The notes under the pieces were generated by a model that did no database searches, was not told where the DNA came from, and saw only the letters and a list, made by a program, of their open reading frames with translations. The translations under genes and the position numbers were made by a program. This document shows positions 20,787-35,859 of a stretch of DNA of 64,000 bases, piece after piece (position 1 is the stretch's first letter; each line of letters starts with the position of its first letter). Where the stretch lies: IMG/VR virus record IMGVR_UViG_3300043418_000072, positions 62,001 through 126,000 of that record. One strand, 5' to 3'.

Positions 20787-21325
20787 TAGCTTACTTCTGT
20801 TTTTCCGCCACCTAAGTCACGACGGTCGATAACACGTGGCCGCATTTCTTCTGGTTGGTTAGCTTCCCATTGCTCATACTCTTCTGTGAGAATATTACGG
20901 CAAATGGTCTTGAACCAATTGTCGACAACATCGGCATCGGTTTTGCCTTGGTAGCCTGCACGTACTAATTTAGCAACAAAGATGTCGTTCCAATCTAGTT
21001 CAAATGCTCCGTTGCCAATATTATCAGTATCTAGCTCTACGCTAGTAATAGTCACATACGGGTCTCCTTTTGCTGTTGCTACATCCTTGGGACTCTTGCC
21101 TTTAACTGTTAGTTTAGCTTTTGCTGGGGTAGCAGGCTTCTTAGCAGGTGCCTTCTTAGGAGACATAGCACTAGTCATTTTATTGATTGTTGCATCGCTT
21201 AGTTTACGCTTTGCCGTCTTTGGTGTAGGTTCGGCTACTGTCTTTTTAGCGACTGTCTTTTTAGCAGTCACTGGTTTCTTAGCTGGTACTGTCTTTTTAG
21301 CAGTCACTGGTTTCTTTGTTGCCAT
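20786..21325 (-). CDS. Phage protein with histone-H1-like Lys/Ala-rich N-terminal repeats
   Basis: KKPVTAKKTV repeats; globular-looking C-terminus FELDWN..F...L...GY.G. Confidence 0.7.
   Translation of the reverse strand: MATKKPVTAKKTVPAKKPVTAKKTVAKKTVAEPTPKTAKRKLSDATINKMTSAMSPKKAPAKKPATPAKAKLTVKGKSPKDVATAKGDPYVTITSVELDTDNIGNGAFELDWNDIFVAKLVRAGYQGKTDADVVDNWFKTICRNILTEEYEQWEANQPEEMRPRVIDRRDLGGGKTEVS
21252..21316. repeat. Direct repeat: 29 nt identical, 36 nt period (coding)
   Basis: ACTGTCTTTTTAGCAGTCACTGGTTTCTT at 21252-21280 and 21288-21316. Confidence 0.85.
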
Positions 21326-21757: not shown

Positions 21758-21911
21758 AAACCGCTCTTAGCTCTGCATTGACTCGAGCAATAGCTTCGGG
21801 GCTGTTCTGCGCTTGCCACTCTGCGCTACGTTCCAGTCCTTGACCTTCCATAACGCAGGGGCAATGTGCTTCACCACATTGTGGTCCTAAACATGCACAT
21901 GGATTGGTCAT
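21714..21911 (-). CDS. Small Cys-rich hypothetical protein
   Basis: CACLGPQCGEAHCPC. Confidence 0.55.
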   Translation of the reverse strand: MTNPCACLGPQCGEAHCPCVMEGQGLERSAEWQAQNSPEAIARVNAELRAVFDEIFERRNERNTH

Positions 21912-22780
21912 GCTAGGCTCGCATATAAGTGCATTTGCAGGTTGAGTTTGAACCCATGCTCAATGCAATAGTGTGCAGCGTATTCATGGTTGGCCTGGTT
22001 GGCCTTCAAGTCTAACAAGCCCGGTTCCCAGAAGCTGATAACTTCATCAACTGTGCTGCGTTCAGCCATTGTGATGTTGCCTTTTTCTGCACGAAGCAAT
22101 TTGATCTTCTGTGGGAAACTGTTGTACACGTTCATTGGGCTGCAATAGATCTCTTTGCCTGTTGCTACTTTCCAGTCATGTGCCCACTGCGGTACGCTGT
22201 TATACGGACTGTCTGCATCTGCACTCATAACAAACTTCAAACAGTCTGCACGTTGCAAGATAGTTGCCGACGGCGCAAAGTATTTGGTAGCTTTACCATC
22301 TTTCTCGGCACACTTAGGGCTACACACTAGCGTTACACCAACAGGAACATCAGTAACAGGAATGCCGTTACTTTCGACTTGAACTGCCTTGAAATGTGCA
22401 AGTTGACGTGCCATAAATGCACTAATGTTCTCCTGCAGGAGCGGTTCGCCGCCAGTCATTACTAACACAACACCGGGATAGTTATTTAAACCATTGTTTG
22501 CCCATGTTGGTGTTGCTTTACCTTGCTTGTTCCAATAGTCGTTGATAGCTGCATACATTTTGCCTTCGATTTGATCGTAAGTCATCCAATCGCCGTCATC
22601 AAAAAATGTATCACAAAAACTGCATACTAGATTACATTTAGCCAATCGAATAAACAATGCGGGCATACCTGCATAAGGGCCTTCGCCTTGCAGTGTAAAG
22701 AACATGCTAGTTACAAACAAGCTGTCTGCCGGAGCATCCTTAAAATACTTCTTACCAATAATTTCATTTGTTCCAAACAT
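21908..22780 (-). CDS. queE: 7-carboxy-7-deazaguanine synthase (radical SAM)
   Basis: F.TLQGEG...G.PA.FIRL..CNL.CSFCDT, TGGEPLLQ, ESNG, SPK and Q.H motifs. Confidence 0.9.
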   Translation of the reverse strand: MFGTNEIIGKKYFKDAPADSLFVTSMFFTLQGEGPYAGMPALFIRLAKCNLVCSFCDTFFDDGDWMTYDQIEGKMYAAINDYWNKQGKATPTWANNGLNNYPGVVLVMTGGEPLLQENISAFMARQLAHFKAVQVESNGIPVTDVPVGVTLVCSPKCAEKDGKATKYFAPSATILQRADCLKFVMSADADSPYNSVPQWAHDWKVATGKEIYCSPMNVYNSFPQKIKLLRAEKGNITMAERSTVDEVISFWEPGLLDLKANQANHEYAAHYCIEHGFKLNLQMHLYASLA

Positions 22781-22781
22781 A

Positions 22782-23000
22782 TTATTTCATCAATCCTTGT
22801 GCTAGTGTTTTTAGTTCTTCGTCTGTCATTAGAAAATTGTATGTGCTAGTGAAGTCAACTTCTCCGTCGCGCATACATTCTTGAATAATCTCTAAGCTAT
22901 TTAGGTCAGTGGGACTAGTGCATTTCCACATACGCACTCGCATACGGAACGCAGTTTCGTCCTTAACTGTAAATTCTTTTACTTCGATGTTGGGGTGCAT
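22782..23000 (-). CDS. Hypothetical protein
   Basis: Operon-packed ORF. Confidence 0.6.
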   Translation of the reverse strand: MHPNIEVKEFTVKDETAFRMRVRMWKCTSPTDLNSLEIIQECMRDGEVDFTSTYNFLMTDEELKTLAQGLMK

Positions 23001-23272
23001 GAGTCGTCCTTAAAAATATTTGACCAGTGGTGTAGCTTTTCTCGCTTGGCAAGGATAGCAGCTTGTACGCTAGCAGCGTCAATCACTCCGCGCTCGTTTA
23101 GCAGTTCAATCATGCAAAGCACATCACCTATCTCTGTTTCTAGATTCTCTCGCTGTGTCTTACCAGACTTGTGAGAGTTATCTAGGCCAAATCGACGGGC
23201 TTTACTAACTGCTTGGATTACTTCTGCACATTCTTCTTGCAGGATGTCCATAATTTCTTGTTGTTTATTCAT
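22979..23272 (-). CDS. MazG-like nucleotide pyrophosphohydrolase
   Basis: LQEECAEVIQA...LETEIGDVL (EExxE...ExxD). Confidence 0.8.
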   Translation of the reverse strand: MNKQQEIMDILQEECAEVIQAVSKARRFGLDNSHKSGKTQRENLETEIGDVLCMIELLNERGVIDAASVQAAILAKREKLHHWSNIFKDDSCTPTSK

Positions 23273-24113
23273 CTTTAATCTTGTTATCCCTTACCCATTT
23301 GCCAAAGTGTACGCAATGGTCTTCGTATCGGTTCATGGCTTTCATTAATGGAAAGTAATTGCCTTTTTGTAATTCAGCAGTAGCAACATCTTCTTTGAAC
23401 ACTGTTTCTAGTGTCTCAAAGATAAACCGTCTGTCGGCACTTGCATTGCTATTGTAATAGAATTGTGTGATCCAGTCAAACCCGTATTCGCTCTTAATGT
23501 CATGTGGAATAACAGTATTAACCATAACCATTCCGTCACGCCCGTATTCAACAAACGTAAACGGGAAAATATACAACCACCAACCAGTAGGATGTGTTTG
23601 CAAGATCCAGCCATCACCTTGGTCCATCTGGATGTCACCTAAGTCCACTTGCTTTGACAAGAATGGATGGATACCATTTTGATGTACGTGCAACAGGTCT
23701 GCTTCTGCGTCCATTAACCAAAGCCAGCTACCCTTGCTCGTACCCTTGCAACTGTGGCTATATTCCAGCGCATCTTCAGCAGCTAGGTCTTGTACCCATG
23801 AATGATCGGGTTCCACAAAGTCCTTGAACACTAACCCACTACGCCCAACTTGTGCAGTTCCGCAGGTTAGTTTCTTGGGATTGTTTAATGGTGTACCGTC
23901 TACTGCCCATTTAAAGTCATGAAACTTACAATAGACTTCTTGTACTACTTCTCCGGGTGAGTGCATTGGGTACATGCGATGCGGACAAAATCTATGAAAC
24001 AAATTAGCAACTGTGTCTGTGCCTTGATTGAGAATAACTTCGGGCGTAACAAAGTTGCCTGCGCTCATCGCAGACTTATGCGCATAGATTTTTGGTATAT
24101 TTTTAAACATCAT
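23265..24113 (-). CDS. Rieske [2Fe-2S] non-heme iron oxygenase (copy 1)
   Basis: CPHR...CKFH Rieske ligands, DLLHV....IH and EDV mononuclear iron ligands. Start moved to MMFKN. Confidence 0.75.
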   Translation of the reverse strand: MMFKNIPKIYAHKSAMSAGNFVTPEVILNQGTDTVANLFHRFCPHRMYPMHSPGEVVQEVYCKFHDFKWAVDGTPLNNPKKLTCGTAQVGRSGLVFKDFVEPDHSWVQDLAAEDALEYSHSCKGTSKGSWLWLMDAEADLLHVHQNGIHPFLSKQVDLGDIQMDQGDGWILQTHPTGWWLYIFPFTFVEYGRDGMVMVNTVIPHDIKSEYGFDWITQFYYNSNASADRRFIFETLETVFKEDVATAELQKGNYFPLMKAMNRYEDHCVHFGKWVRDNKIKDE

Positions 24114-24286
24114 TGATTCCAATGCTTTATCACGCCCGCTACAATAAAGCAGTTGGTTATGACGTAGCACATTACGATGGCAGTTCGAATGCAGGCAATA
24201 CGGTCTGCTTCTGCATCCGAGCTGCCTGCTTTTTCTCCTAGGGCCTTAGCCCATAGATGCCAAAATTTACGCAAATAGGTCTTCAT
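24110..24286 (-). CDS. Small phage membrane protein
   Basis: W.LWAKALGEKAG..D.EAD.IA.IRT plus one transmembrane segment. Start moved to MKTYLRK. Confidence 0.6.
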   Translation of the reverse strand: MKTYLRKFWHLWAKALGEKAGSSDAEADRIACIRTAIVMCYVITNCFIVAGVIKHWNQ

Positions 24287-24767
24287 TCCATTCACGGTGG
24301 CCGTCACGGTATGCCATGTTGCTTTGTGTTTCACGAACTTCCACGCGGTAACACCACAAACGAGCTGCTTCATGTGGGCCCCACATTTCTGGAATGTAAA
24401 CACCATTCACATACTTGTACAGCATGTCACTTAGTGCTTCGCATCCTAGTGCAGGCAACACAACAATCTTGGCCATGCCCTTCTCTTGTAGCAGTTTGAA
24501 TGTCTCCATTTCTGGATCATCTTGTGCAACGATAAGAGTGTGGTCAAATTGATCTTCGAGTGTCTTCTTTAGTTCTTTAAGTCCACCGTAATCAGCGGCC
24601 CAGTTACGAACGTCTAGGTCATTAGTTCCAAAATAGAACTTCATGCTAAATGCGTAGCCGTGAATCTTATTGCAGTGCGAGTCAGCACGCCATTGTCTGT
24701 ATGCAACAGGAAATGCGTTATGGTACTCTTTAGTACTTGTATATTTGTATTGAACGGGTGTCGTCAT
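24267..24767 (-). CDS. queD: 6-carboxytetrahydropterin synthase
   Basis: HC.KIHGY, DYG.LK....DQFDH and VEVRET motifs. Confidence 0.88.
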   Translation of the reverse strand: MTTPVQYKYTSTKEYHNAFPVAYRQWRADSHCNKIHGYAFSMKFYFGTNDLDVRNWAADYGGLKELKKTLEDQFDHTLIVAQDDPEMETFKLLQEKGMAKIVVLPALGCEALSDMLYKYVNGVYIPEMWGPHEAARLWCYRVEVRETQSNMAYRDGHREWNEDLFA

Positions 24768-24769
24768 GC

Positions 24770-24840
24770 TTATTCTCCTATGTTAAATTTTAGCATAGGC
24801 AGCAGAATTTGTATAGCGGGATGATGCTCTAAAGGCCGCT
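24770..24840 (-). promoter_or_regulatory. Candidate preQ1-I-like pseudoknot/riboswitch and RBS-sequestering hairpin upstream of queD
   Basis: P1 AGCGG/CCGCT, loop AGCA pairing with tail TGCT, A-rich linker; a CCTATG/CATAGG hairpin covers part of AGGAG. Confidence 0.45.
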
Positions 24841-25677
24841 GAACTTATTGAGTAGTGTATCTCTATTTATAAAGAACGCTTGGTGCTCTGGGTTTTTACC
24901 TAACTTACTCAAACTCTTTTTAATAATAAATTCAAGTTCGGGCAATTGGTAAAAGTTGAAAAAGGATGATTGTATTTTTGATCTGCAGAGAATACCATAC
25001 AAGTCAGCTTTTGCTATTTGGGTGTTCTTAGTTGTGTCAAGCTCCCTAACCAGTGCAGCAAATAATTCGGGAGTGTATGAGAAAAATGCACCGGGATGCT
25101 TAGATCCGTGTACCACATCTAAAAAATAATCGTGGTCAGTTAACTCAACTAGGTCGCCAATGGGTTCGTAAAAAGTAGATGAAACATGAACCGGATCGCC
25201 GTACCCTGTTAATACACAGGCGTTGGGCAGTAAGTCTGCAACAATGTTTACAATCAAAGAACGGTCAAATGGCAAACAATGTTTATGGGCATGTGCAATA
25301 AGCATTTTAACTAATTCAGTATGCTTTTCTTTCCCGCTAAAATCTAATACTAGCGGGGTTAGGTTATTATCTTGGCAGAATTTATAAGCATACCAATTCT
25401 CTGATTCAACATAGTCAGCAGCCACTATCACCGGAGTGAACGCGATACTGTTTCTAACTAACACTTTAGCCACAAACTCGCTATCAAGGCCGCCACTTAA
25501 ACACAGGTGCAGGTTGGCGTACTTGTCTGCAACCAACTGTGCAGTATAATCAGCAGCATCATCAAATGACATTACCGCCGGGGTCGCAGTTGTTTCAAAT
25601 GCAAACGGTGATGTTATATTCCCGGGGCTATTATTTTCTAAGTTAATAGATGCCCACTCATTGTGTCCAATTTTCAT
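24829..25677 (-). CDS. PP-loop (SGGxDS) adenine nucleotide alpha-hydrolase-like protein 1
   Basis: LSGGLDSE motif; C-terminal HPGAFFSYTPEL. Confidence 0.7.
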   Translation of the reverse strand: MKIGHNEWASINLENNSPGNITSPFAFETTATPAVMSFDDAADYTAQLVADKYANLHLCLSGGLDSEFVAKVLVRNSIAFTPVIVAADYVESENWYAYKFCQDNNLTPLVLDFSGKEKHTELVKMLIAHAHKHCLPFDRSLIVNIVADLLPNACVLTGYGDPVHVSSTFYEPIGDLVELTDHDYFLDVVHGSKHPGAFFSYTPELFAALVRELDTTKNTQIAKADLYGILCRSKIQSSFFNFYQLPELEFIIKKSLSKLGKNPEHQAFFINRDTLLNKFSGL

Positions 25678-26528
25678 CTCAACAGTAACTTAATCAATTG
25701 GTCTTTGTGCCACGTGAGTGCAGGGAAGAAACTATACATACCTACGCCTGCAAATTCCGCTAACTGTTTCCTAACTGCTAACGAAATTGGTAGTGTTGGA
25801 TTCGTGTCCTTGGGTTTGTACGGAAGACTATACAATTCAGCCTTGCCTGCAGATTCGCTTACGTTGACATTAAGCGACTTTGCTATTGCAAGGAACAGCT
25901 CTGGTGTATATTGGAAAAATGCGCCAGGATGTACGCCGGGCTGCATAAACTCGGTAATAAACGAAAACCACTCAATGTCGAATATCTCCCCAGCTGGCTG
26001 ATAGTAGTCATCAGTGTGAGCCCCGATTGGACTATCGCCCACTAACAGTTGGCCGCCTTTGTTGCTAACGTATTCAGCTAAGTAGGATACTATGTTAGTT
26101 AGCCCCGACACTTGCTTCAGGTCTTTTGCAATTAATCTAAACTGGCGTACCAGCCTTGGATCATTCTCAATAAAGGTGAGTATAACTGGTTCTATGTTGT
26201 GTAGTTTGCACCAATGTAATGCGCAATGAGTTTCAACGTTGTCTGGCGTTATTGCAATTATTGGAGTAAACGAGATACCGTTTCGGAATAATACTTCAGC
26301 AACATAGTCACTATCAAGGCCTCCGCTCATTGCTAAGTAGAGATTGCTACATCGATCATTAATTAACTTAGCAGTATAATCGGCGGCCTCATGGAATGTT
26401 AATGTATCGATGACCTCTGTGTGATTAAAGCTCATACTAACTGTTGACAACCTAGGGTGCTCGACTGCTATTAATGTAACTGAATACCAGTTACTGTGTC
26501 CAGCATTGATCGTTACTGAGTGCGACAT
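25674..26528 (-). CDS. PP-loop (SGGxDS) protein 2
   Basis: MSGGLDSD and HPGAFFQYTPEL. Confidence 0.7.
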   Translation of the reverse strand: MSHSVTINAGHSNWYSVTLIAVEHPRLSTVSMSFNHTEVIDTLTFHEAADYTAKLINDRCSNLYLAMSGGLDSDYVAEVLFRNGISFTPIIAITPDNVETHCALHWCKLHNIEPVILTFIENDPRLVRQFRLIAKDLKQVSGLTNIVSYLAEYVSNKGGQLLVGDSPIGAHTDDYYQPAGEIFDIEWFSFITEFMQPGVHPGAFFQYTPELFLAIAKSLNVNVSESAGKAELYSLPYKPKDTNPTLPISLAVRKQLAEFAGVGMYSFFPALTWHKDQLIKLLLR

Positions 26529-27406
26529 AGTATTTTTAAAAATTCTTCTCTATCAGGGCATGGAGCAAAATCTCTGGCACCCCAATTCAATGGTACATGT
26601 GCGTGTGCCCATTTAAACAAATCGTTATACTCGGGGATAGTCTTGGCTATATAGTTATGAGTAAAGAACTCGCACCCGGTTAGCTTAGGACGAGGCAGCA
26701 AATCAAACAGACGCCATTTGTTATCCTCAACAGGCTGAGAAGTGTCCCAATGATAAATTACGCTTGCAAGCATTTCCGGAGACCAATAAAAGAAAGCCCA
26801 CGGGTGCTTGTTTGGGTTTACTATCTCTATATAGAAATCGCTCTCGTCAAACATAAACCCACGAAAAGTTTCCGCAAATTCACGATCTGCTTTAACAAGT
26901 CGCAATTTTGGATCAGGGTAATATGATGGTAATGCGCCAGTTACTAAGTATCCACCTAGACGTTCAACTTCATTGGCTACTAAGTTAACAGTTGCGCCGA
27001 ACCAACTGATACCTTTAATTCTTCCTACTGTGCGCTTACCGTAATCTATAAATTCAAACGGGTCTACTTCAAACTTAATAAGTTCAACATCATTTTCAGC
27101 ACACCACTTATCGGCGTACCATTCGCCAATCATGAGATAACCTTTACAAGTCATCATAATGGCTTTGAACGGGACTCCAGCAGCTTTAAAGCTCTTTGCT
27201 ACATATTCGCTATCGCAACCACCACTAAGTGCAACGTAGATATTTGGGTACATTGCATAGATTTCCTTGGCAGTTGAAATAGCTATTTCTTCCAGTGGCA
27301 GTATCTTATCTGCTTGCTCTGTGAATTGTACAGTTAAATCCTCATCACGAATACGGCGAGGATTTCCGCCAAACGAATAAGTGAGCCAGTTGTTTCTACA
27401 GTACAT
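26513..27406 (-). CDS. PP-loop (SGGxDS) protein 3
   Basis: LSGGCDSE and HPWAFFYWSPEM. Confidence 0.7.
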   Translation of the reverse strand: MYCRNNWLTYSFGGNPRRIRDEDLTVQFTEQADKILPLEEIAISTAKEIYAMYPNIYVALSGGCDSEYVAKSFKAAGVPFKAIMMTCKGYLMIGEWYADKWCAENDVELIKFEVDPFEFIDYGKRTVGRIKGISWFGATVNLVANEVERLGGYLVTGALPSYYPDPKLRLVKADREFAETFRGFMFDESDFYIEIVNPNKHPWAFFYWSPEMLASVIYHWDTSQPVEDNKWRLFDLLPRPKLTGCEFFTHNYIAKTIPEYNDLFKWAHAHVPLNWGARDFAPCPDREEFLKILCRTQ

Positions 27407-28227
27407 TAGGTGTTTGCTTTATACCAATCATAGAAGTGCTTGATGTCTACTTCTAGTGGGTCGAGAGTTTTTGATGGTGTTCTGTATTTATTGTTTAGCG
27501 ATAGCCGATTAACTGCATCTACGTCTTCGTCAAATGTGACTTCTGCTACCTTAATAAAGTTTTCTCGCACATGCTGCGGAGTAGACTCATTAAACAAGTA
27601 ATGGATGTATACTTCATACCCATAGTCGGTTTGTACCATTTCGCTAAAGTACAAGCATCCTGGTTCCCACTCGATATGAGTGAATGGGTAAATGAATAGC
27701 CACCATCCGTGTTCATGGTGCTGACAAACCCAATCACTACCGTATTCAGTTTGCAACTTGTGTATGTCTACGTAACTAGTTAGCAATGGGTGAATCTTGT
27801 CAACGTGTAGCAGATCCACGTGCATTTCCATTTGCCACTTCCAGTCACCGGTTCCTGTTCTGCGTGTACTGTGACTATAGGTAAACGAATCGTTAGCCAA
27901 GTCATTGACCCATTTTGCGTCAGAGGGTTCCTGCCAGTCCATAAACATCAGCCCACTTTTGCCAACTGTAAGATTACGGGGCTTTAAACATGCCGAGTTA
28001 TTAGTAGGCGTTCCGTCATCGTTCCATTGCCAGCCATGTAGCTCGCAACGCATATTATCTGCAACGCCAGCTGGCTGCAAAATAGGAAATCCGCGATGCG
28101 GACAGATGTTAGTAAATGCTTCGAACTGTTGGTTAATAACAAACTTGTTAGATGCAAAAAACTTATTATCTTTTAAACTATCCTTGTGCCCAAAAAGTCT
28201 TGGCACCGGTCCTTTAAACAAATCCAT
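27406..28227 (-). CDS. Rieske [2Fe-2S] non-heme iron oxygenase (copy 2)
   Basis: NICPHRG...CELHGW, DLLHVDKIH and EDV motifs. Confidence 0.8.
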   Translation of the reverse strand: MDLFKGPVPRLFGHKDSLKDNKFFASNKFVINQQFEAFTNICPHRGFPILQPAGVADNMRCELHGWQWNDDGTPTNNSACLKPRNLTVGKSGLMFMDWQEPSDAKWVNDLANDSFTYSHSTRRTGTGDWKWQMEMHVDLLHVDKIHPLLTSYVDIHKLQTEYGSDWVCQHHEHGWWLFIYPFTHIEWEPGCLYFSEMVQTDYGYEVYIHYLFNESTPQHVRENFIKVAEVTFDEDVDAVNRLSLNNKYRTPSKTLDPLEVDIKHFYDWYKANT

Positions 28228-28552
28228 GTTCTACTCTATCTTGTACTTCTTTTAAATTATGTGCAGTTACATTATCCATGAACTTGAGCAAGAACATGCT
28301 TGCTGTTGAAGCATCATCTCCGTGAAAGTGTATGCGGATACCACCGGTGCCGTTTTGATGATAGTGGCACCACTTGGCTTTACCAAATGCAATGTACTCT
28401 TTATCTATTTTGTTGCCACGGTGATTGTAATAGCTGTCAACTTTCTTACGGCCGCCAACTAGCTCGCACCACTCAATGAGTTCAGTAGTCATTTCCTTAA
28501 CGTCAATCCATACTGCATAGGTTACAGTGCATCCTGGTGGTAGTGCAATCAT
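28214..28552 (-). CDS. Hypothetical protein (small FxxDxxxAxxFxL family)
   Basis: IHFHGDDASTASMFLLKF. Confidence 0.65.
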   Translation of the reverse strand: MIALPPGCTVTYAVWIDVKEMTTELIEWCELVGGRKKVDSYYNHRGNKIDKEYIAFGKAKWCHYHQNGTGGIRIHFHGDDASTASMFLLKFMDNVTAHNLKEVQDRVEHGFV

Positions 28553-28896
28553 TGTTTAAGTATCCGTTCGTTAATGATCATGTCCATGATAGACTCAATT
28601 CTACAATTCTGTATTAGGTGCCCGTATACTATGCTAAACATCAGGATAGTGTCTTCGTCTGGAAAGAATACTCTAGTACCTGTATTGCCACCGGCGCGGT
28701 TGCTATAACTAGGCTTGCACCCAGGGAACTGCACTAGATAGGATACAGTGCCCCACGACGTTGTGCTACTCGGGATAACTGCTCCACGAGCACGTAGGTA
28801 CTCAGCTGCCTCTTCTGTAAGCTCAAACAAGTCTACAGGATAGGATCCGTTCATTATTGTGATCTGCTTGCTAGATATTTTTGCCATTGTATCCAT
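28549..28896 (-). CDS. Hypothetical protein, tandem paralogue of 28214..28552
   Basis: RVFFPDEDTILMFSIVY. Confidence 0.55.
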   Translation of the reverse strand: MDTMAKISSKQITIMNGSYPVDLFELTEEAAEYLRARGAVIPSSTTSWGTVSYLVQFPGCKPSYSNRAGGNTGTRVFFPDEDTILMFSIVYGHLIQNCRIESIMDMIINERILKQ

Positions 28897-29312
28897 GTGC
28901 CTTTACTAAGGAATCCCCATTCGCGACGCTTACGACCTGGCATAAACAGTGTCCAACATTCAATACTGGGATCAAGCTCAATGCGATGATAGCTATTGGC
29001 TTTTGCACTACGGAATGATCCAGCACCACGCCATGTTGCAATCTCGCCAATCTTGTGACCCTTGCTGTTAAACTGAGGTTGCCATTCCCAGTACCCGCCC
29101 TTTAAGATAAGAGTTCGGTAATTCCAAGGATGATCATGCACGTCATCGGGATCTGACTTAAGAAACTTGTGCAGAAAAATGTTAAAGGGGAAATTCTCAC
29201 GGTCTTTAAGAAATACATAGTAACGCTCTAAATAGGGTTCGTTGTTTACACGGTCCATAACAATACGTTTGCGACCGTGTGCTTCAAGCCAGTTGAGAAT
29301 CCACTGCTTCAT
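28854..29312 (-). CDS. Cupin-fold protein (HDHPW family)
   Basis: FLH.F..SD....HDHPW..GGYWE..HRIEL..WTLF motifs. Start moved to MKQWIL. Confidence 0.7.
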   Translation of the reverse strand: MKQWILNWLEAHGRKRIVMDRVNNEPYLERYYVFLKDRENFPFNIFLHKFLKSDPDDVHDHPWNYRTLILKGGYWEWQPQFNSKGHKIGEIATWRGAGSFRSAKANSYHRIELDPSIECWTLFMPGRKRREWGFLSKGTWIQWQKYLASRSQ

Positions 29313-29320
29313 AGTTGGCT

Positions 29321-29536
29321 TTACTTGCAGGTGTCTAAAAATTGATCTAAACGCATACACGCTTCGTCAAAGTCTACGCCCCAGACATGTGCGTAAATAA
29401 TACCATCTTTAATTTGCATATCAAATGGTACCATACCGTTAAATCTAAAGTCACTAGGCATTTCAGTTGTGACCATAAACTCGTTTAATACCTTTGCACG
29501 ATTGATCAGTGCTGTTGTCATGTCTGCGGCGTTCAT
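29321..29536 (-). CDS. Hypothetical protein
   Basis: AAGGA RBS; operon-packed. Confidence 0.6.
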   Translation of the reverse strand: MNAADMTTALINRAKVLNEFMVTTEMPSDFRFNGMVPFDMQIKDGIIYAHVWGVDFDEACMRLDQFLDTCK

Positions 29537-29545
29537 GTTGTTTCC

Positions 29546-30247
29546 TTAGCGTGGTGCAAACTCTTGTTGCAATTTGATGTTGTCAAAGAACTCTTTCTTT
29601 ACGCTTGCGTCTTCTTTAAAGGCTCCGCGTAGTACTGTGGTCTGAGTAAGGCTAGAGTGAGCCATGATACCACGATTCTCACAACACCCGTGGGTAGCTT
29701 GAATATAAACTGCAACGTCCTGTGATCCAGTTGCAAGTTCAATCTCACGAGCGATGTCCATACACAGTTCTTCTTGTAGTGTTCCACGTCTTGCGCACCA
29801 CTGCGCAATCCTGGTATACTTCGATAATCCGATGAGTTTCTGTCCAGCAATAATACCAATGTAAGCCACACCTGTAACAGGTTGGTGATGATGGCTACAC
29901 ATGCTCTTAAGCTCACTGCGCACAACCAACATTCCGTCGTATGCGCCATCGCTATCATTGGGAAACGCAGTTGCGCTAGGGCTCGCATCGTACCGCCCAG
30001 CCATAATTTCGTTGTAGTACATTTTTGCAAGACGCCTTGCTGTGCCTTTTGAGTTCGGATCATTTTCACGGTCAATCAATAGTGTGTCAAGTACTTTTTC
30101 AAATGCTTCTGCTGCTTCGCTAATCAATGATTCTTTTTCTTCTTCGCCAACATACTCACTAATGTTGTCGCCTGCCCAAAAGCGTTTATTGTCTGCTCGC
30201 ATCTTGTCGCGAATAACTTGTGATAAGTTTTTACTTGTATCTGTCAT
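29546..30247 (-). CDS. folE: GTP cyclohydrolase I
   Basis: SMCSHH, GLSK..R, LQE, H.C...RG and T....G.F motifs. Confidence 0.95.
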   Translation of the reverse strand: MTDTSKNLSQVIRDKMRADNKRFWAGDNISEYVGEEEKESLISEAAEAFEKVLDTLLIDRENDPNSKGTARRLAKMYYNEIMAGRYDASPSATAFPNDSDGAYDGMLVVRSELKSMCSHHHQPVTGVAYIGIIAGQKLIGLSKYTRIAQWCARRGTLQEELCMDIAREIELATGSQDVAVYIQATHGCCENRGIMAHSSLTQTTVLRGAFKEDASVKKEFFDNIKLQQEFAPR

Positions 30248-30248
30248 T

Positions 30249-30845
30249 TTAGTCCTTGATAGTGATTGTTCTTAGGTCTGGGTACTCAACGGTTACTGGT
30301 TTGGGTTTATTAACCTTAACTCCTTCAAGCAATGCAAGTCCTTGTACTGCTTCTTCAGGTGTAGGCTTATAATGATACCCAACTCTAAACTCTTTCTGAG
30401 ATTCCCATGGTTTAATATTTAGGTCGCGTCCATCATAGCGCATTAAAATTAACGCATCATAGGCCGCCTTGTCATCTAGTAGTATAGCACCTCCGCGACC
30501 AATATGTAAAGGCTTTGTGTGCCCAAAACTCAAACATTGAATTTGCCCCGGATGATACATGTTTTCTTCCAATCGTCTAGCACTATCCCAGATTCTAGTT
30601 TTTCGAAACTTGTATTCGCCTACCCATTGTGCAGGTGACCCAACTTCGTAGTAATATTGAATATTGAGTTTGTGCATCAACATCGGAATACTCAAGTATG
30701 TAAATGGGGTAAATGCGCAAAACTCTACCTTGTCATATCTCATACAAAGTTCAATTGCATGTGTGCAGCAATCGGTCATGATTGCATAGGGTGCGCCGGT
30801 AAATTCTGCTAACGCAATTTCAAATTTCTTAATTTTATCAAACAC
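30249..30845 (-). CDS. Short DegT-like PLP-dependent aminotransferase
   Basis: FE..LA...GA.YA, WDSA and LSFGHTKP...GRGGAIL motifs; only about 200 aa. Probable GTG start at 30845. Confidence 0.7.
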   Translation of the reverse strand: MFDKIKKFEIALAEFTGAPYAIMTDCCTHAIELCMRYDKVEFCAFTPFTYLSIPMLMHKLNIQYYYEVGSPAQWVGEYKFRKTRIWDSARRLEENMYHPGQIQCLSFGHTKPLHIGRGGAILLDDKAAYDALILMRYDGRDLNIKPWESQKEFRVGYHYKPTPEEAVQGLALLEGVKVNKPKPVTVEYPDLRTITIKD

Positions 30846-32695: not shown

Positions 32696-32881
32696 TTAAA
32701 TTCCTTTGAGAGTTTTTAGCATTATGTATTGTTCAAATACTTCAACTATCTCGGGATCTCCCCCGAGATAGTATTCACTAGCAGCCCTCATGCTTAACGC
32801 TAAAGCAGCCGCTTCTGATAATGTAGGCCAACGTGCTTGACAGCACTCGACCCAAATTTCTTGTTTAGTATTTAGACTCAT
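32696..32881 (-). CDS. Hypothetical protein (start moved to MSLNTK)
   Basis: Fills the gap after the glycosyltransferase gene. Confidence 0.5.
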   Translation of the reverse strand: MSLNTKQEIWVECCQARWPTLSEAAALALSMRAASEYYLGGDPEIVEVFEQYIMLKTLKGI

Positions 32882-34043
32882 GTGTATGCTTGCGATAGTC
32901 AGTCGACATACGCAACCACTGTTCGCCTTTGCCTTCAATAATGTCAACAATGCGATCAGCAGTACCGCTAGTCCATGCGCTAATCTTGCCCATGTTTTCG
33001 CTTGGCTTTTGTAGCAACTTCTCTAGCTTGTCTAATGCGTCATCAATGCTCCACGGTACATACATACGAGTATGATCATTTCCAAAAGTTTCAGGGAAAG
33101 AGCGATATGCAGGATACAGTACATTACATCCCAACGCGTCAGCTTCGGAGACAGTGTTGGAGACCCAATCTTGTAAAGCACAATTAAATACAACACGAGA
33201 GTTATTAACAATGTCATAGTACTGATTCTTTTCTAGGTCTTCGTAAATGGTTAACAATCCTGCAGTCTGCATGCCACGTGTACGTTCCATGTAGCTATCG
33301 TTATTGCTTTTAAGAACAGCACCCGAGCAAACAGCAAACTCTACTCCCGAACCAGGATGACGTTCGTGCCATGCTTTGATAACATCCATGTAAAAATCTG
33401 GTTGCTTTTCTTGGTCCCAACGTGCAGAGAATACCACGCGATGCTTACGCTCATTCCATGGAGTAATCTTATTGCCCACACGCTCTTGAACTTCTTCGGT
33501 GTTAAACACCAATCCTGAAATATTGTAGATTGGTGATTTCCAACCTGCAATCTTCATGTGCATTACCATTTCTTCATTAGTGGCCAACACGCCATCGACA
33601 AAGCTGTCCACCATGCGTTCATAGTGACCCATAAATTCACCCATTCCCCAAACATGTACGAAATCGTCAGGGTCAATAGACTGAGCGAGACAACGAACAA
33701 AGATTCTTGGGCGCGAAGCCTCTGGGATTTGTTTAAGGATGTAGGGTAGGCTTTCAATCCCTGGTTGGAACATGTCTTCGAAATATACAACATCATCTTT
33801 AGTTACTGCTCCTTGTTGCATCAACCGAACCAAATTCATAATCTGGCTCATACCAAAGTAGCTGCGACCGTGTGCGTCCAGTACTTGTCCTGTAACAATC
33901 TTTTGACTGTTATCTAGTGTTAGGCCCGGAACATACACTGCTTCAACACCGCGACGATCAAACACACGTTTGTTCCATTCTGTAAGTTGTAGGGTATAGC
34001 GAGCTTTGTAACTCTCTAGTCCCATGTAATATAGCTTGCCCAT
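32865..34043 (-). CDS. GT-B (family 4-like) glycosyltransferase
   Basis: FSARWDQEKQP, then QD.VSNTVSEA...GC..L.P...SFPE, typical of the GT-B C-terminal domain. Confidence 0.8.
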   Translation of the reverse strand: MGKLYYMGLESYKARYTLQLTEWNKRVFDRRGVEAVYVPGLTLDNSQKIVTGQVLDAHGRSYFGMSQIMNLVRLMQQGAVTKDDVVYFEDMFQPGIESLPYILKQIPEASRPRIFVRCLAQSIDPDDFVHVWGMGEFMGHYERMVDSFVDGVLATNEEMVMHMKIAGWKSPIYNISGLVFNTEEVQERVGNKITPWNERKHRVVFSARWDQEKQPDFYMDVIKAWHERHPGSGVEFAVCSGAVLKSNNDSYMERTRGMQTAGLLTIYEDLEKNQYYDIVNNSRVVFNCALQDWVSNTVSEADALGCNVLYPAYRSFPETFGNDHTRMYVPWSIDDALDKLEKLLQKPSENMGKISAWTSGTADRIVDIIEGKGEQWLRMSTDYRKHTHESKY

Positions 34044-34727: not shown

Positions 34728-35177
34728 TTAGATACTAATCAGTTGTGGGCGGTGAGATTCATATTTAATTAAAGCGCCGTTCTCACCATCTTCGGCAACT
34801 TCAATCCAGACACTGCGGTCAGGATACTTTGTGTTGATTTGTGTGTACAAATCATCTGCAATCATTTCGCAACTCTTAAAGTTGAGCTCTAGCGTACCGC
34901 CTGCATACAAGTTTTCGAGCCAACGTTTAAATTGGATAAACTCAATGTCGCGGTCGTTGTGAAACACGTCAATCCATACACGGAAGTGAAAGATATGACG
35001 ATGTGGTAGGCCGAGGAACGAAACGTCGTACTCGTCGCCTGTTGCTAGTGCTGGATCAGTTGCTGCTGCTGGGTATTTGTGAATGCCTTCTTTCTTGAAG
35101 GTTACCCAAATTTGTCGGTCTGCACGTTGCATGATACGCTCACGCTTATCTGCTAGTGCTTGGTCTCGTTGGCTCAT
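34728..35177 (-). CDS. QueD-like T-fold protein with LxxxHRHxF motif (DpdL-like CDG decarboxylase candidate)
   Basis: EGIH.YP, FLGLPHRHIFHF, DRDIEFI, SCEMIA and EDGENG motifs; lacks the QueD CxxxHGH/Y motif. Confidence 0.65.
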   Translation of the reverse strand: MSQRDQALADKRERIMQRADRQIWVTFKKEGIHKYPAAATDPALATGDEYDVSFLGLPHRHIFHFRVWIDVFHNDRDIEFIQFKRWLENLYAGGTLELNFKSCEMIADDLYTQINTKYPDRSVWIEVAEDGENGALIKYESHRPQLISI

Positions 35178-35359: not shown

Positions 35360-35859
35360 AAAGTTTCGTCTTTCGTATAGCTGGACCAATCAGTAAATAC
35401 TTTTCGATCCATAAGGTTGTGAACACTGTGGCACCAAACACCTGGGTTAGTTGCTGCAAAGTCTTTGTCGTCTAGCTTAATTGTAGCATTATAACCTAGC
35501 TGTTGTAAATACGGCAGTTTCACCGAAATCATCGGAATAAAGTTATGATGTTCGCATAGACATCCTTCTAGTAGGCCTTCAACACATTTAGCATCAATGT
35601 CTAGCGTACAAGTATATCCTTTTTCCAAAAACGGACGAATCATGTTTTCCCAATCGTTCCAAACCGGATCGTTAATTGCAGGATTCGGAAAGCTCATATT
35701 GGCACCAAAGTAGATATGGTCCGCACCGTGTAGGTTAAGTGCAATATCTGCCAATGGCTGTATGCCCACTACAAACAGGGTTTGTTTTCCAAATGCGGGA
35801 GTATGTTCTACTTCCTTGCCTTGGAAGAACTTGACTTCTTCGTGGCCTTCTCTGATCAT
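35356..35859 (-). CDS. Hypothetical protein coupled to the TGT-like gene
   Basis: G.EVEHTPA.G..TLFV, HIYFGAN and KLDD.DF.ATNPGVW motifs; ATGA-coupled. Confidence 0.7.
   Translation of the reverse strand: MIREGHEEVKFFQGKEVEHTPAFGKQTLFVVGIQPLADIALNLHGADHIYFGANMSFPNPAINDPVWNDWENMIRPFLEKGYTCTLDIDAKCVEGLLEGCLCEHHNFIPMISVKLPYLQQLGYNATIKLDDKDFAATNPGVWCHSVHNLMDRKVFTDWSSYTKDETL

What the first reader, a model, noticed from the sequence alone, without database searches (positions are those of the whole stretch)
23265..28227. Two Rieske oxygenases bracket queD and three tandem SGGxDS PP-loop paralogues
Seen, in transcription order: Rieske-2, PP3, PP2, PP1, queD, small membrane protein, Rieske-1, mazG, small ORF, queE. 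Both Rieske proteins keep CxH..CxxH and a DxxH..H/D iron site and share WWL(Y/F)I(F/Y)PFT. The three PP-loop proteins share SGGxDS and HP(G/W)AFFx(Y/W)xPE. Established: QueC, asparagine synthetase and tRNA thiolases use SGGxDS to adenylate carboxyl or carbonyl groups. Inference: these could stand in for or diversify the missing QueC step, for example ATP-dependent amidation of CDG with oxidative tailoring. Alternatively they form an independent small-molecule pathway inserted into the operon. They lack the QueC Zn-binding Cys cluster, so they are not canonical QueC.
Basis: partly seen in the sequence, partly recalled or inferred. Interest (0 to 1): 0.7.

Follow-up and report, generated by a model that had tools for sequence, protein, structure and literature searches.

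The report
Phage oxygenase plus amide-ligase tailoring cassette
A giant phage carries three asparagine-synthetase-like ATP-dependent amide ligases and two Rieske oxygenases inside its 7-deazaguanine DNA-modification operon; the oxygenase-ligase gene pair is an uncharacterised, phage-only cassette that most likely decorates a carboxyl group (here probably on the modified guanine), and it does not replace the missing QueC.

Summary
All the genes sit on the minus strand of a 354-kb jumbo phage, in the stated order and with the stated motifs. The interpretation needs revision.

1. The three PP-loop proteins are not QueC-like. A high-confidence model (pLDDT 96.5) is closest to asparagine-synthetase-B-type synthetase domains (Z 14.3, against 7.4 for QueC). 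This points to stand-alone ATP-dependent carboxylate-amine ligases, the mechanistic class of the phage DNA ligase CmoY.

2. They are three old paralogues, each with orthologues in other phages. All are under purifying selection.

3. The conserved unit is a Rieske-ligase gene pair. Of 73 Rieske-anchored viral loci, 71 have a ligase gene within 8 kb and 64 have one directly adjacent. Only 17 have que genes nearby.

4. In this phage lineage the pair sits in a hypervariable slot between folE and queD. The surrounding operon is of the ACP17/PA5oct type (DpdA3-like transglycosylase candidate, DpdL, FolE, QueD, QueE, MazG). Only 5 of 44 sister loci carry a ligase, so it is an optional add-on and not a QueC substitute.

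Best guess (0.42): amidation and oxidative tailoring of the 7-carboxy-7-deazaguanine handle. Main rival (0.36): an unrelated accessory pathway lodged in a recombination hot spot.

The parts
27406..28227 (-). Rieske-2: compact (273 aa) Rieske non-heme iron oxygenase alpha subunit. First gene of the conserved Rieske->ligase pair.
   Evidence: Pfam Rieske 2.8e-9. AF2 pLDDT 96.8. VIA Z 21.8 to 3n0q, 21.2 NagG, 20.3 TPADO, 20.1 CntA. Invariant C42 H44 C61 H64 D138 H141 H146.
26513..27406 (-). PP3: stand-alone AsnB-type PP-loop ligase (297 aa). Its start overlaps the Rieske-2 stop by 1 nt.
   Evidence: SGGCDSE motif. Family HMM 3e-80. Own clade with orthologues in L006-L008, L034-L040. dN/dS 0.04.
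25674..26528 (-). PP2: stand-alone AsnB-type PP-loop ligase (284 aa).
   Evidence: AF2 pLDDT 96.5. VIA Z 14.3 to human ASNS and E. coli AsnB, 13.4 beta-lactam synthetase, 7.4 QueC. 908 representative homologues.
24829..25677 (-). PP1: stand-alone AsnB-type PP-loop ligase (282 aa), immediately upstream of queD.
   Evidence: PP->QueD adjacency in 30 of 40 loci.
24267..24767 (-). QueD (6-carboxytetrahydropterin synthase).
   Evidence: PF01242 2.5e-15, phrog_2389 1.5e-35.
24110..24406 (-). Small ORF with a hydrophobic C-terminus (phrog_1679). Overlaps the queD 3' end, so the real start is probably internal.
   Evidence: translation.
23265..24170 (-). Rieske-1: second Rieske oxygenase paralogue (37% identical to Rieske-2). 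Likely start at about 24113.
   Evidence: Pfam Rieske 1.3e-5. Alignment. dN/dS 0.15 against the L008 orthologue.
22979..23272 (-). MazG-type nucleoside triphosphate pyrophosphohydrolase.
   Evidence: PF03819 2.4e-8, phrog_4856.
21908..22780 (-). QueE (7-carboxy-7-deazaguanine synthase).
   Evidence: phrog_2076 7.8e-47; TIGR03963 7e-20.
28214..28552 (-). 112-aa ORF (cluster c27). A lineage-specific companion found in the same slot in other que phages.
   Evidence: no family hit.
28854..29360 (-). 168-aa ORF matching phrog_4786, named 'cysteine dioxygenase' in PHROGs (cupin is my reading of that name). Another variable-slot gene.
   Evidence: phrog_4786 8e-41.
29546..30247 (-). FolE (GTP cyclohydrolase I), upstream anchor of the variable slot.
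   Evidence: PF01227 4.9e-40.
32865..34043 (-). GT4-type glycosyltransferase, homologue of Acidovorax phage ACP17 gp124. Conserved core of the operon.
   Evidence: jackhmmer. Weak Pfam GT1 hits. Atlas neighbours include the tRNA-queuosine mannosyltransferase family, a lead only.
34728..35177 (-). DpdL homologue (QueD paralogue, proposed CDG decarboxylase).
   Evidence: LGLPHRHIF matches the published LxxxHRHxF signature (PMC10516641). Homologous to ACP17 gp125, 7e-72.
35856..37550 (-). 564-aa candidate DpdA3-type DNA guanine transglycosylase.
   Evidence: DSGGFQ, VLQG, LGTS and FDCA motifs. Homologues lie beside que genes in PA5oct, Vibrio phage 2.275.O and Sinorhizobium phage Phosso. No PF01702 hit, and the fold was not tested.

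Best explanation
PP1, PP2 and PP3 are stand-alone asparagine-synthetase-B-type ATP-dependent carboxylate-amine ligases. They would adenylate a carboxyl group through the SGGxDS PP-loop and then let an amine attack to form an amide. They have no glutaminase domain, so the amine is not glutamine-derived ammonia made on the enzyme.

Together with a Rieske non-heme-iron oxygenase they form a phage-specific two-gene tailoring cassette (Rieske -> ligase). In this phage the cassette is expanded to two oxygenases and three anciently diverged ligases.

The cassette occupies the hypervariable accessory slot of a 7-deazaguanine DNA-modification operon of the ACP17/phiST/PA5oct type. That operon holds a DpdA3-like transglycosylase candidate, DpdL, a GT4 glycosyltransferase, FolE, QueD, QueE and MazG, and has no QueC.

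Most likely role: an optional extra tailoring layer. The carboxyl of 7-carboxy-7-deazaguanine (the QueE product, free or already in DNA) serves as a handle and is converted to one or more N-substituted 7-amido-7-deazaguanines. This is analogous to CmoY ligating glycine to 5-carboxymethylcytosine in DNA. The Rieske enzymes would hydroxylate the appended group, the amine donor or the base.

Shown: the fold class, the motifs, the paralogue history, the gene-pair conservation, the operon context and the optional distribution. Inferred: the ligase chemistry, the identity of the carboxyl substrate, the amine, the role of the oxygenase, and whether the reaction happens on DNA.
For: - Fold: PP2 model pLDDT 96.5. 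Best matches are AsnB-class synthetase domains over about 255 of 284 residues (Z 14.3-10.7), well above QueC at 7.4. The PDB profile search hits only PP-loop enzymes. The nearest Atlas and BFVD neighbours are virus-only unnamed clusters, then Asn synthases.
- Precedent: CmoY is a 271-aa phage AsnB homologue that ligates glycine to a carboxylated DNA base (PMC12783734; gene located). hhalign of PP against CmoY gives 93% probability over the PP-loop half.
- Operon: the genes overlap by 1-16 nt from the 112-aa ORF (28214-28552) through PP1, and PP1 lies 61 nt from queD.
- Position: PP is on the queD strand in 40/40 loci and immediately upstream in 30/40, across four PP clades.
- Carboxyl source: the genome makes CDG (FolE, QueD, QueE) but has no QueC.
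- DNA-modification context: DpdL signature, a TGT-motif protein that is syntenic with que genes in three cultured jumbo phages, and PA5oct DNA resisting restriction enzymes in a pattern read as a modified G (PMC12191111).
- Other genes in the same slot in sister phages are nucleotide- or deazapurine-themed: HIT, phosphoribosyltransferase, YhhQ-like Vut_1, MazG.
- The closest non-que relatives of PP3 (the L056/L057/L059 group) sit one gene from a methyltransferase-CmoA (Cx-SAM synthase) fusion, which would install another kind of carboxyl handle.
- All five genes are under purifying selection.
Against: - The Rieske-ligase pair lies without que genes nearby in 55 of 73 Rieske-anchored loci.
- Three near-complete phage genomes with a PP gene lack QueD.
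- In those loci the neighbours are fatty-acid-desaturase-like, Asp/Asn-hydroxylase-like, radical SAM and TctC-like genes and tail fibres, not nucleotide enzymes.
- Only 5 of 44 sister que loci carry a PP gene.
- The que-linked and non-que clades interleave on the tree, which suggests a function that does not depend on context.
- The phage encodes DpdL, proposed to decarboxylate CDG, which would remove the handle.
- The slot also holds plainly unrelated genes: FG-GAP proteins and an isocitrate-lyase-like gene.
- FolE and QueD are highly conserved (83-100% identity) and could simply act as recombination anchors for a hot spot.
- No biochemical data exist for any family member.
Confidence: 0.42

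Rival explanations
1. The cassette is an independent accessory pathway. The Rieske-ligase pair, with its extra ligase copies, would make or modify something unrelated to deazaguanine, such as an N-acyl or amidated small molecule, a lipid, a peptide/protein, or another nucleobase. It would lie between folE and queD only because that interval is a recombination hot spot flanked by highly conserved genes.
For: - 71 of 73 Rieske-anchored loci have a PP gene within 8 kb, and 64 have one directly adjacent, but only 17 have que genes.
- Near-complete genomes G003, G006 and G007 have a PP gene and no QueD.
- Neighbours elsewhere are FA_desaturase (42 loci, multi-copy), AspH-like, radical SAM, TctC-like binders, FA_hydroxylase, 2OG oxygenases and SAM decarboxylase.
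- The FolE-QueD gap ranges from 70 bp to 4.8 kb with changing content, and only 5 of 44 loci hold a PP gene.
- The slot also contains FG-GAP and isocitrate-lyase-like genes.
- Que and non-que clades interleave on the tree.
Against: - PP is always on the queD strand and is usually the gene immediately upstream, in four different PP clades. A random hot spot would scatter position and orientation.
- The genes are translationally coupled inside the operon.
- This genome keeps its other PP-loop/TctC modules elsewhere, so the que slot is not the only place such genes can sit.
- A ligase of this type needs a carboxyl substrate, and the operon makes one that has no QueC to consume it.
Confidence: 0.36
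2. QueC replacement. One or more PP proteins would convert CDG to the primary amide ADG, or on to preQ0, restoring the canonical pathway. The amide nitrogen would come from free ammonia, or from ligation of glycine followed by Rieske-catalysed alpha-hydroxylation and dealkylation.
For: - QueC is absent.
- The chemistry is PP-loop adenylation.
- The structural neighbours of the Rieske protein include C-N and C-O cleaving monooxygenases such as CntA, and at lower Z the demethylases dicamba monooxygenase, a guaiacol O-demethylase and NdmA.
- A DAO-type FAD amine oxidase accompanies PP in L010.
- ADG-containing phage DNA is known (PMC10516641).
Against: - 39 of 44 sister loci with the same core lack a PP gene, and searched relatives have no canonical QueC.
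- The cultured analogues ACP17 and phiST work without QueC, through DpdL and DpdA3 (PMC10516641).
- The fold is AsnB-like, not QueC-like, with no Zn-Cys cluster.
- Three diverged paralogues are hard to explain by a single amidation step.
- There is no QueF or other preQ0-consuming enzyme in the block.
Confidence: 0.08
3. The ligases act on proteins or peptides, for example by forming an isopeptide or lactam or by amidating Asp/Glu side chains, as lasso-peptide cyclases and other AsnB homologues do. The oxygenases would hydroxylate residues.
For: - The AsnB-like superfamily includes lactam-forming enzymes; beta-lactam synthetase and carbapenam synthetase are top structural hits.
- Non-que homologues sit beside tail-fibre genes and Asp/Asn-hydroxylase-like and radical SAM genes.
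Against: - No precursor peptide or structural gene lies in the window block.
- The block sits among replication and nucleotide genes.
- The proteins are half the size of lasso cyclases and lack their N-terminal domain.
Confidence: 0.06

Closest known systems
CmoY (Synechococcus phage S-B43), the ATP-dependent amide ligase of the 5-carboxymethylcytosine hypermodification pathway (PMC12783734)
   Same: Phage-encoded, about 270-aa stand-alone asparagine-synthetase-like PP-loop protein without a glutaminase domain. Sits in a DNA-modification operon next to a pyrophosphatase. Uses a carboxylated base as a handle. A few PP-family members lie beside CmoA-like genes.
   Different: Only the N-terminal PP-loop half aligns (hhalign 93%, E 3e-7 over 107 columns). 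CmoY matches Pfam PF00733, whereas the PP family mostly does not. There is no CmoA or CmoX in this genome. CmoY has no Rieske partner.
Asparagine synthetase B class synthetase domains (AsnB, beta-lactam synthetase, carbapenam synthetase, TsnB9)
   Same: Best structural matches, aligned over about 90% of the model (Z 14.3-10.7). SGGxDS PP-loop. By inference, carboxylate adenylation followed by N-attack.
   Different: No N-terminal Ntn glutaminase domain. 9-15% identity to these four matches. About 280 aa against more than 470 aa. Virus-only family.
QueC (7-cyano-7-deazaguanine synthase, PF06508)
   Same: PP-loop ATP pyrophosphatase. Would act on the same operon's product, CDG. Lies in a que gene cluster.
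   Different: No PF06508 match above threshold. No C-terminal Zn-binding Cys cluster. Structural Z is only 7.4.
Rieske non-heme iron oxygenase alpha subunits (3n0q, NagG, TPADO, CntA, naphthalene dioxygenase)
   Same: Complete Rieske domain plus catalytic domain. Conserved 2Fe-2S and mononuclear iron ligands. Z 18.5-21.8 over the whole protein.
   Different: Unusually compact at 273 aa. 13-19% identity to the top eight matches. No beta subunit in the block and no plant-type ferredoxin (PF00111) in the genome; reductase families were not searched. Obligately paired with a PP-loop ligase gene.
phiST/ACP17-type 7-deazaguanine DNA modification system (FolE, QueD, QueE, DpdL, DpdA3, MazG; Hutinet et al. 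2023, PMC10516641)
   Same: The window has homologues of ACP17 gp122, gp124 and gp125 (DpdL) plus FolE, QueD, QueE and MazG, has no QueC, and lies next to replication genes.
   Different: ACP17 has no tblastn-detectable PP-ligase or Rieske genes; phiST itself was not examined. The transglycosylase candidate here is a 564-aa protein that is only motif-similar to ACP17 gp123.

Membership tests
QueC (PF06508) | Significant match to the QueC profile | tested here: not met
   No PF06508 hit for PP1-3 at E<=0.1. Whole-genome search found none. Only 1 of 60 family members gives a weak hit.
QueC (PF06508) | C-terminal Zn-binding cysteine cluster | tested here: not met
   Only one Cys column is invariant among PP1-3 and across 60 members (C107, PP2 numbering); there is no CxxC cluster. 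The motif definition is recalled from knowledge of QueC structures.
QueC (PF06508) | QueC as nearest structural relative | tested here: not met
   B. subtilis QueC 3bl5 scores Z 7.4 at rank 22, against Z 14.3 for AsnB-type enzymes.
PP-loop ATP pyrophosphatase superfamily | SGGxDS P-loop motif in a Rossmann-like alpha/beta core | tested here: met
   S68 G69 G70 x D72 S73 is invariant or near-invariant in 60 members. The profile hits NAD synthetase and tRNA thiolases. All fold hits are PP-loop enzymes.
Asparagine synthetase B-type synthetase domain (PF00733) | Fold match covering the synthetase domain | tested here: met
   Human ASNS and E. coli AsnB at Z 14.3 with 254-255 residues aligned. Beta-lactam synthetase 13.4, carbapenam synthetase 12.6, TsnB9 10.7.
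Asparagine synthetase B-type synthetase domain (PF00733) | Sequence match to PF00733 | tested here: inconclusive
   Only 5 of 60 members give weak hits (best E 2.4e-4), and none of the window's three does.
Asparagine synthetase B-type synthetase domain (PF00733) | N-terminal Ntn glutamine amidotransferase domain | tested here: not met
   The proteins are 282-297 aa. Only about 40 N-terminal residues of beta strands precede the PP-loop domain.
CmoY-type DNA carboxyl-amine ligase | Full-length homology to SpCmoY | tested here: not met
   hhalign A3 against A6 gives 93% probability, but only columns 61-170 align. tblastn of PP2 against cultured phages finds nothing.
CmoY-type DNA carboxyl-amine ligase | Neighbouring Cx-SAM synthase (CmoA) and carboxymethyltransferase (CmoX) | tested here: not met
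   The window genome has no C5-MTase or CmoA-like gene. A CmoA-like gene lies near PP only in L056/L057/L059 and L190.
CmoY-type DNA carboxyl-amine ligase | ATP-dependent amide formation on a carboxylated DNA base | not testable with these tools
   Needs an enzyme assay.
Rieske non-heme iron oxygenase alpha subunit | CxH...CxxH 2Fe-2S ligands | tested here: met
   C42 H44 C61 H64 are invariant in 40 sequences. Pfam Rieske hits both copies.
Rieske non-heme iron oxygenase alpha subunit | Mononuclear iron 2-His-1-carboxylate site in a START-like catalytic domain | tested here: met
   D138, H141 and H146 are invariant, and E234/D235 are near-invariant. Whole-length fold match at Z 18.5-21.8. Assigning D235 as the carboxylate ligand is an inference.
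Rieske non-heme iron oxygenase alpha subunit | Dedicated reductase or ferredoxin partner | tested here: not met
   No PF00111 ferredoxin in the genome. Reductase families were not searched. Electrons would have to come from the host.
DpdA/TGT transglycosylase (context gene 35856-37550) | Match to PF01702 or the TGT fold | tested here: inconclusive
   No PF01702 hit, no PDB sequence hit, and only a weak hhalign match to ACP17 gp123 (E 0.0033). However, the DSGGFQ, VLQG, LGTS and FDCA motifs line up, and homologues flank que genes in three cultured jumbo phages. The TGT motifs are recalled from knowledge.
DpdL (context gene 34728-35177) | LxxxHRHxF signature and homology to phage DpdL | tested here: met
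   LGLPHRHIF. jackhmmer to ACP17 gp125 at 7e-72. The signature is taken from PMC10516641.

The most novel reading that the evidence does not exclude
The Rieske-oxygenase/AsnB-like-ligase gene pair is a new, widespread, modular phage DNA-hypermodification cassette. It would amidate carboxyl handles on bases. In this jumbo phage, three specialised ligases and two oxygenases would convert 7-carboxy-7-deazaguanine in DNA into previously unseen N-substituted (possibly hydroxylated) 7-amido-7-deazaguanines. This would be a second generation of deazaguanine hypermodification, layered on the DpdA3/DpdL system.
Probability: 0.25. Interest if true: 0.85.

Novelty: new variant of a known kind. Interest (0 to 1): 0.62.

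Why it matters
Eight 7-deazaguanine derivatives are known in phage DNA, and none carries an amide-linked substituent larger than NH2. If these ligases use the CDG carboxyl as a handle, as CmoY uses carboxymethylcytosine, the chemical space of guanine hypermodification would expand. That would bear on restriction and CRISPR evasion, on the modification-dependent nucleases that hunt such DNA, and on sequencing artefacts.

Whatever the substrate turns out to be, the work defines two things:
- a large, virus-only family of stand-alone asparagine-synthetase-like ligases (more than 900 representative clusters);
- its near-obligate pairing with a compact Rieske oxygenase, an enzyme combination with no described function.

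It also shows that the folE-queD interval of this jumbo-phage lineage is a tailoring or accessory slot whose contents differ from phage to phage. That gives natural plus/minus comparisons for experiments.

Tried and rejected
- Megablast and tblastn of the block, of PP2, of Rieske-2 and of a c1-type PP-loop protein against 50,697 cultured phage records found no match. The families are known only from metagenomic phages.
- PHROGs and NCBIfam gave nothing for the PP proteins, and only weak sub-threshold NCBIfam oxygenase hits for Rieske-2.
- The promoter and terminator scan was at chance level.
- Complex prediction of Rieske-2 with PP3 returned no answer (score 0.00). It counts neither for nor against binding.
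- The profile of the 564-aa TGT-motif protein against PDB sequences gave no hit, and hhalign to Iggy DpdA gave no relation. DpdA identity therefore rests on motifs and synteny only.
- I first took the GT4-like gene (32865-34043) for DpdA3 because it is homologous to ACP17 gp124. I rejected this because its profile and Atlas neighbours are GT-B glycosyltransferases.
- The idea that the 98-aa ORF is a remnant of the 284-aa c9 protein was rejected; the cluster link was a single-linkage artefact.
- A search for clade-specific specificity residues among the four que-linked PP clades found none at the thresholds used.
- The supplement of PMC10516641 is not held, so published DpdA3 and DpdL accession lists could not be checked.
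- Literature searches for Rieske + deazaguanine, and for Rieske + asparagine synthase + desaturase + TctC in phages, found nothing.

Full report
**What is there.** The window is bases 62,001-126,000 of a 354,098-bp virus record rated complete by CheckV. Its family-B DNA polymerase is closest, among cultured phages, to the giant myoviruses Sinorhizobium phage Phosso (52%) and Agrobacterium phage Atu_ph07 (48%).

All genes of the region are on the minus strand. In transcription order:

| Gene | Coordinates |
|---|---|
| FolE | 29546-30247 |
| 168-aa ORF (phrog_4786, 'cysteine dioxygenase') | 28854-29360 |
| small ORF | 28549-28896 |
| small ORF | 28214-28552 |
| Rieske-2 | 27406-28227 |
| PP3 | 26513-27406 |
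| PP2 | 25674-26528 |
| PP1 | 24829-25677 |
| QueD | 24267-24767 |
| small hydrophobic ORF | 24110-24406 |
| Rieske-1 | 23265-24170 |
| MazG | 22979-23272 |
| 72-aa ORF | 22782-23000 |
| QueE | 21908-22780 |

Profile searches confirm FolE, QueD, QueE, MazG and both Rieske domains. Genes from the 112-aa ORF (28214-28552) through PP1 overlap by 1-16 nt, and PP1 ends 61 nt before queD. The sequence therefore shows one tightly packed transcription unit.

SGGxDS and HP(G/W)AFFx(Y/W)xPE occur in the three PP proteins, which are 24-33% identical. CxH..CxxH, DxxHx4H and WWL(Y/F)I(F/Y)PFT occur in the two Rieske proteins, which are 37% identical.

**What the PP-loop proteins are.** Pfam, PHROGs and NCBIfam give essentially nothing. 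A profile of the three paralogues nevertheless finds 908 representative clusters at E<=1e-3 in 1.84 billion proteins, nearly all 260-300 aa long.

An AlphaFold2 model of PP2 built on 60 homologues is very confident (pLDDT 96.5, pTM 0.93). An exhaustive structural comparison puts asparagine-synthetase-B-type synthetase domains clearly first:

| Structure | Z |
|---|---|
| human ASNS | 14.3 |
| E. coli AsnB | 14.3 |
| beta-lactam synthetase | 13.4 |
| carbapenam synthetase | 12.6 |
| hydroxyamidotransferase TsnB9 | 10.7 |
| LarE, NAD synthetase, TilS (generic PP-loop enzymes) | about 8-10 |
| QueC | 7.4 |

The AsnB-type matches cover about 255 of 284 residues. Foldseek against PDB, Swiss-Prot models and AFDB clusters agrees. 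The closest models anywhere are virus-only, unnamed clusters (TM 0.74-0.78).

The proteins lack the N-terminal glutaminase domain of AsnB and the Zn-cysteine cluster of QueC. They are therefore a virus-specific family of stand-alone AsnB-like enzymes. By established knowledge of that class, such enzymes adenylate a carboxylate and let a nitrogen nucleophile attack it. This chemistry is inferred, not shown.

**A precedent.** In Synechococcus phage S-B43, the 271-aa asparagine-synthetase homologue CmoY ligates glycine, ATP-dependently, to the carboxyl of 5-carboxymethylcytosine in DNA (PMC12783734). I located that gene between cmoA and cmoX. A profile-profile comparison shows homology to the PP family only over the PP-loop half (93% probability, E 3e-7, 107 columns). 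The PP family works like CmoY in class but is not a member of the CmoY family.

**History of the three copies.** A tree of 103 family members places PP1, PP2 and PP3 in three separate, well-supported clades. Each clade has orthologues in other phages, and a fourth que-linked clade exists. Phages carry one to three of these in different combinations. dN/dS against orthologues is 0.04-0.10 for the PP genes and 0.02-0.15 for the Rieske genes (dS is near saturation). These are old, maintained paralogues, which suggests different specificities rather than gene dosage.

**The Rieske proteins.** The Rieske-2 model (pLDDT 96.8) matches complete Rieske oxygenase alpha subunits over its whole length: 3n0q Z 21.8, salicylate 5-hydroxylase NagG 21.2, TPADO 20.3, carnitine monooxygenase CntA 20.1, naphthalene dioxygenase 19.7. 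The metal ligands are invariant in 40 homologues. No plant-type ferredoxin gene (PF00111) is found in the genome, and reductase families were not searched. The host would have to supply electrons.

**The operon around the block.** The best cultured match to the window's QueD is Acidovorax phage ACP17. This is one of the phages in which Hutinet et al. (PMC10516641) describe FolE, QueD and QueE without QueC, plus DpdL (a proposed CDG decarboxylase with signature LxxxHRHxF) and the distant transglycosylase DpdA3, which allows complete guanine replacement.

Three of the ACP17 genes lying between folE and queE have homologues just upstream of the window's block:
- gp125 corresponds to window 34728-35177, which carries LGLPHRHIF and is therefore DpdL.
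- gp124 corresponds to 32865-34043, a GT4-type glycosyltransferase.
- gp122 corresponds to 35356-35859.

The adjacent 564-aa ORF (35856-37550) has no Pfam TGT hit. It does carry DSGGFQ, VLQG, LGTS and FDCA, which line up with the corresponding motifs of ACP17 gp123. From my own knowledge, these resemble the catalytic motifs of tRNA-guanine transglycosylases.

Its homologues in cultured jumbo phages lie beside deazaguanine genes: PA5oct gp168 near QueE, and Vibrio phage 2.275.O next to QueF, a queuosine-biosynthesis gene and FolE. Sinorhizobium phage Phosso carries both this gene and QueD. PA5oct DNA resists restriction enzymes in a pattern that suggests a modified G (PMC12191111).

I conclude, by inference, that the window encodes a DpdA3-type 7-deazaguanine DNA-modification system, and that the finding lies inside it.

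**Is the block tied to que genes? Three anchored scans of IMG/VR.**

(i) Anchored on the PP family (80 loci). Including the four loci fetched earlier by protein look-up, 36 of the 82 loci with a PP gene have FolE, QueD or QueE within 10 kb, and all of those belong to the window's syntenic lineage. The other 46 do not. In those 46 loci the PP gene sits with:
- a distantly related ~400-aa PP-loop family and a TctC-like binding protein;
- FA_hydroxylase, 2OG-Fe(II) oxygenases, SAM decarboxylase and tail-fibre genes.

Three 90-100% complete genomes of this kind have no QueD.

(ii) Anchored on QueD. Of 44 loci of this lineage that contain both FolE and QueD, only 5 have a PP gene. Only 3 have a Rieske gene, and all three are PP-positive. 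The FolE-QueD interval varies from 70 bp to 4.8 kb. Across sister phages the two slots variously hold:
- a HIT-family gene (in 20 loci), a phosphoribosyltransferase and an ORF matching PHROGs 'cysteine dioxygenase';
- a YhhQ-like transporter, B12-radical SAM enzymes, epimerases and a DAO-type oxidase;
- an isocitrate-lyase-like gene and FG-GAP proteins.

The PP genes are therefore an optional accessory in a hypervariable slot. Searched relatives lack canonical QueC, which rules out an essential QueC-replacing role.

(iii) Anchored on the Rieske family. Of 73 loci, 71 have a PP-family gene within 8 kb. In 64 it is directly adjacent (<150 nt), and in 38 the order is Rieske -> PP on one strand, as in the window. 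Only 17 loci have que genes. Common neighbours elsewhere are multi-copy fatty-acid-desaturase-like genes (42 loci), the ~400-aa PP-loop family (27), TctC-like proteins (23), Asp/Asn-hydroxylase-like genes (15) and radical SAM genes (14).

The conserved functional unit is thus the Rieske-ligase pair. I found no description of this combination in the literature searches.

**Weighing the explanations.**

For a deazaguanine role:
- Whenever a PP gene is present in this lineage it is on the queD strand (40/40). It is the gene immediately upstream in 30 of 40 loci, across all four clades.
- It is translationally coupled inside the operon.
- The operon makes a carboxylated base (CDG) that has no QueC to consume it.
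- Many other occupants of the slot are nucleotide- or deazapurine-related.
- The genome keeps its other PP-loop/TctC modules elsewhere.
- The nearest non-que relatives of PP3 lie one gene from a methyltransferase-CmoA fusion (E. coli CmoA 4GEK, E 5e-13). That is another carboxyl-handle installer, and it fits a general picture of ligases that amidate installed carboxyl handles.

Against a deazaguanine role:
- The pair is mostly found without que genes, among lipid-type and protein-type oxygenases.
- Que and non-que clades interleave on the tree.
- DpdL, if it really decarboxylates CDG, would remove the handle.
- The highly conserved FolE and QueD genes are ideal recombination anchors for a hot spot.

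I put optional amide or oxidative tailoring of CDG at 0.42, an unrelated accessory pathway at 0.36, a QueC bypass at 0.08 and protein/peptide modification at 0.06. The rest is unassigned.

**Verdict.** It reveals a large, virus-only family of AsnB-like ligases, near-obligately paired with a compact Rieske oxygenase. In this phage the pair is amplified and embedded in a DpdA3/DpdL-type deazaguanine operon. The specific claim that the proteins stand in for QueC is not supported. The substrate remains unproven. Mass spectrometry of the DNA and simple ATP/amine assays would settle it.

Noticed in passing
window 35856-37550 (-): 564-aa ORF with the TGT-like motifs DSGGFQ, VLQG, LGTS and FDCA. Homologues sit next to que genes in PA5oct (gp168) and Vibrio phage 2.275.O, and Sinorhizobium phage Phosso carries both genes. 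It is probably the DpdA3-type DNA transglycosylase, yet Pfam PF01702 does not detect it.
   Followed up: partly
window 34728-35177 (-) and 35356-35859 (-): A DpdL homologue with the published LxxxHRHxF signature (LGLPHRHIF), and a homologue of ACP17 gp122 of unknown function. Both are conserved in the lineage.
   Followed up: partly
window 32865-34043 (-): GT4-type glycosyltransferase homologous to ACP17 gp124, conserved next to the que genes. Language-model neighbours include the tRNA-queuosine mannosyltransferase family, which hints at glycosylation of a deazaguanine derivative. With the adjacent epimerase (30838-31821) and DegT-like gene (30249-30875) it could form a sugar branch of the pathway.
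   Followed up: partly
window 62150-63109 (-); own genome G000 207530-209549 and 285042-288878: TctC-like solute-binding proteins encoded by the phage, paired elsewhere in the genome with ~400-aa distant PP-loop (AsnB-like) genes. The same ligase/TctC pairs recur, often in several copies, beside tail-fibre genes in many phage contigs. Their function is unknown.
   Followed up: partly
L059 11451-12905 (G006, complete 162-kb phage): 485-aa fusion of a class-I SAM methyltransferase domain with a CmoA-type Cx-SAM synthase, one gene from a PP-family ligase. It may be a self-contained carboxymethyl-handle installer plus ligase, different from CmoA/CmoX/CmoY.
   Followed up: partly
Sister loci L010, L015, L022, L028 (FolE-QueD and QueD-QueE intervals): The slots hold a HIT-family protein, a phosphoribosyltransferase, a YhhQ-like Vut_1 transporter, a DAO-type FAD oxidase, a B12-binding radical SAM enzyme, an isocitrate-lyase-like protein and FG-GAP proteins. 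This gives a menu of candidate deazapurine tailoring or salvage genes that differs from phage to phage.
   Followed up: partly
L099, L102-L104, L106, L107 and others: QueD genes 83-91% identical to the window's occur on many viral contigs with no FolE or QueE within 10 kb. Either a lone queD is common in these phages or the pathway genes are dispersed.
   Followed up: no
L003 15869-17491 and 5653-6732: A syntenic relative carries a tryptophan-halogenase-like flavoenzyme and an AMP-binding (adenylate-forming) enzyme in the same neighbourhood, and has no Rieske gene in the locus fetched.
   Followed up: no
P0136 (metagenomic protein, 688 aa): Two PP-family modules fused in one polypeptide, which suggests that tandem ligases can act together.
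   Followed up: no
window 45755-48109 (-), 7625-8893 (-) and 9293-10393 (-), 38944-39879 (-): A 784-aa HD-domain protein, a MoxR-type AAA ATPase next to a DUF2201 VWA/metallopeptidase protein, and a class-I methyltransferase beside the polymerase. All are unstudied here.
   Followed up: no
window 20786-21325 (-): Lysine/alanine-rich 179-aa protein with a conserved C-terminal domain, present in 29 of the 36 que-lineage loci just downstream of queE. It may be a DNA-binding protein.
   Followed up: no
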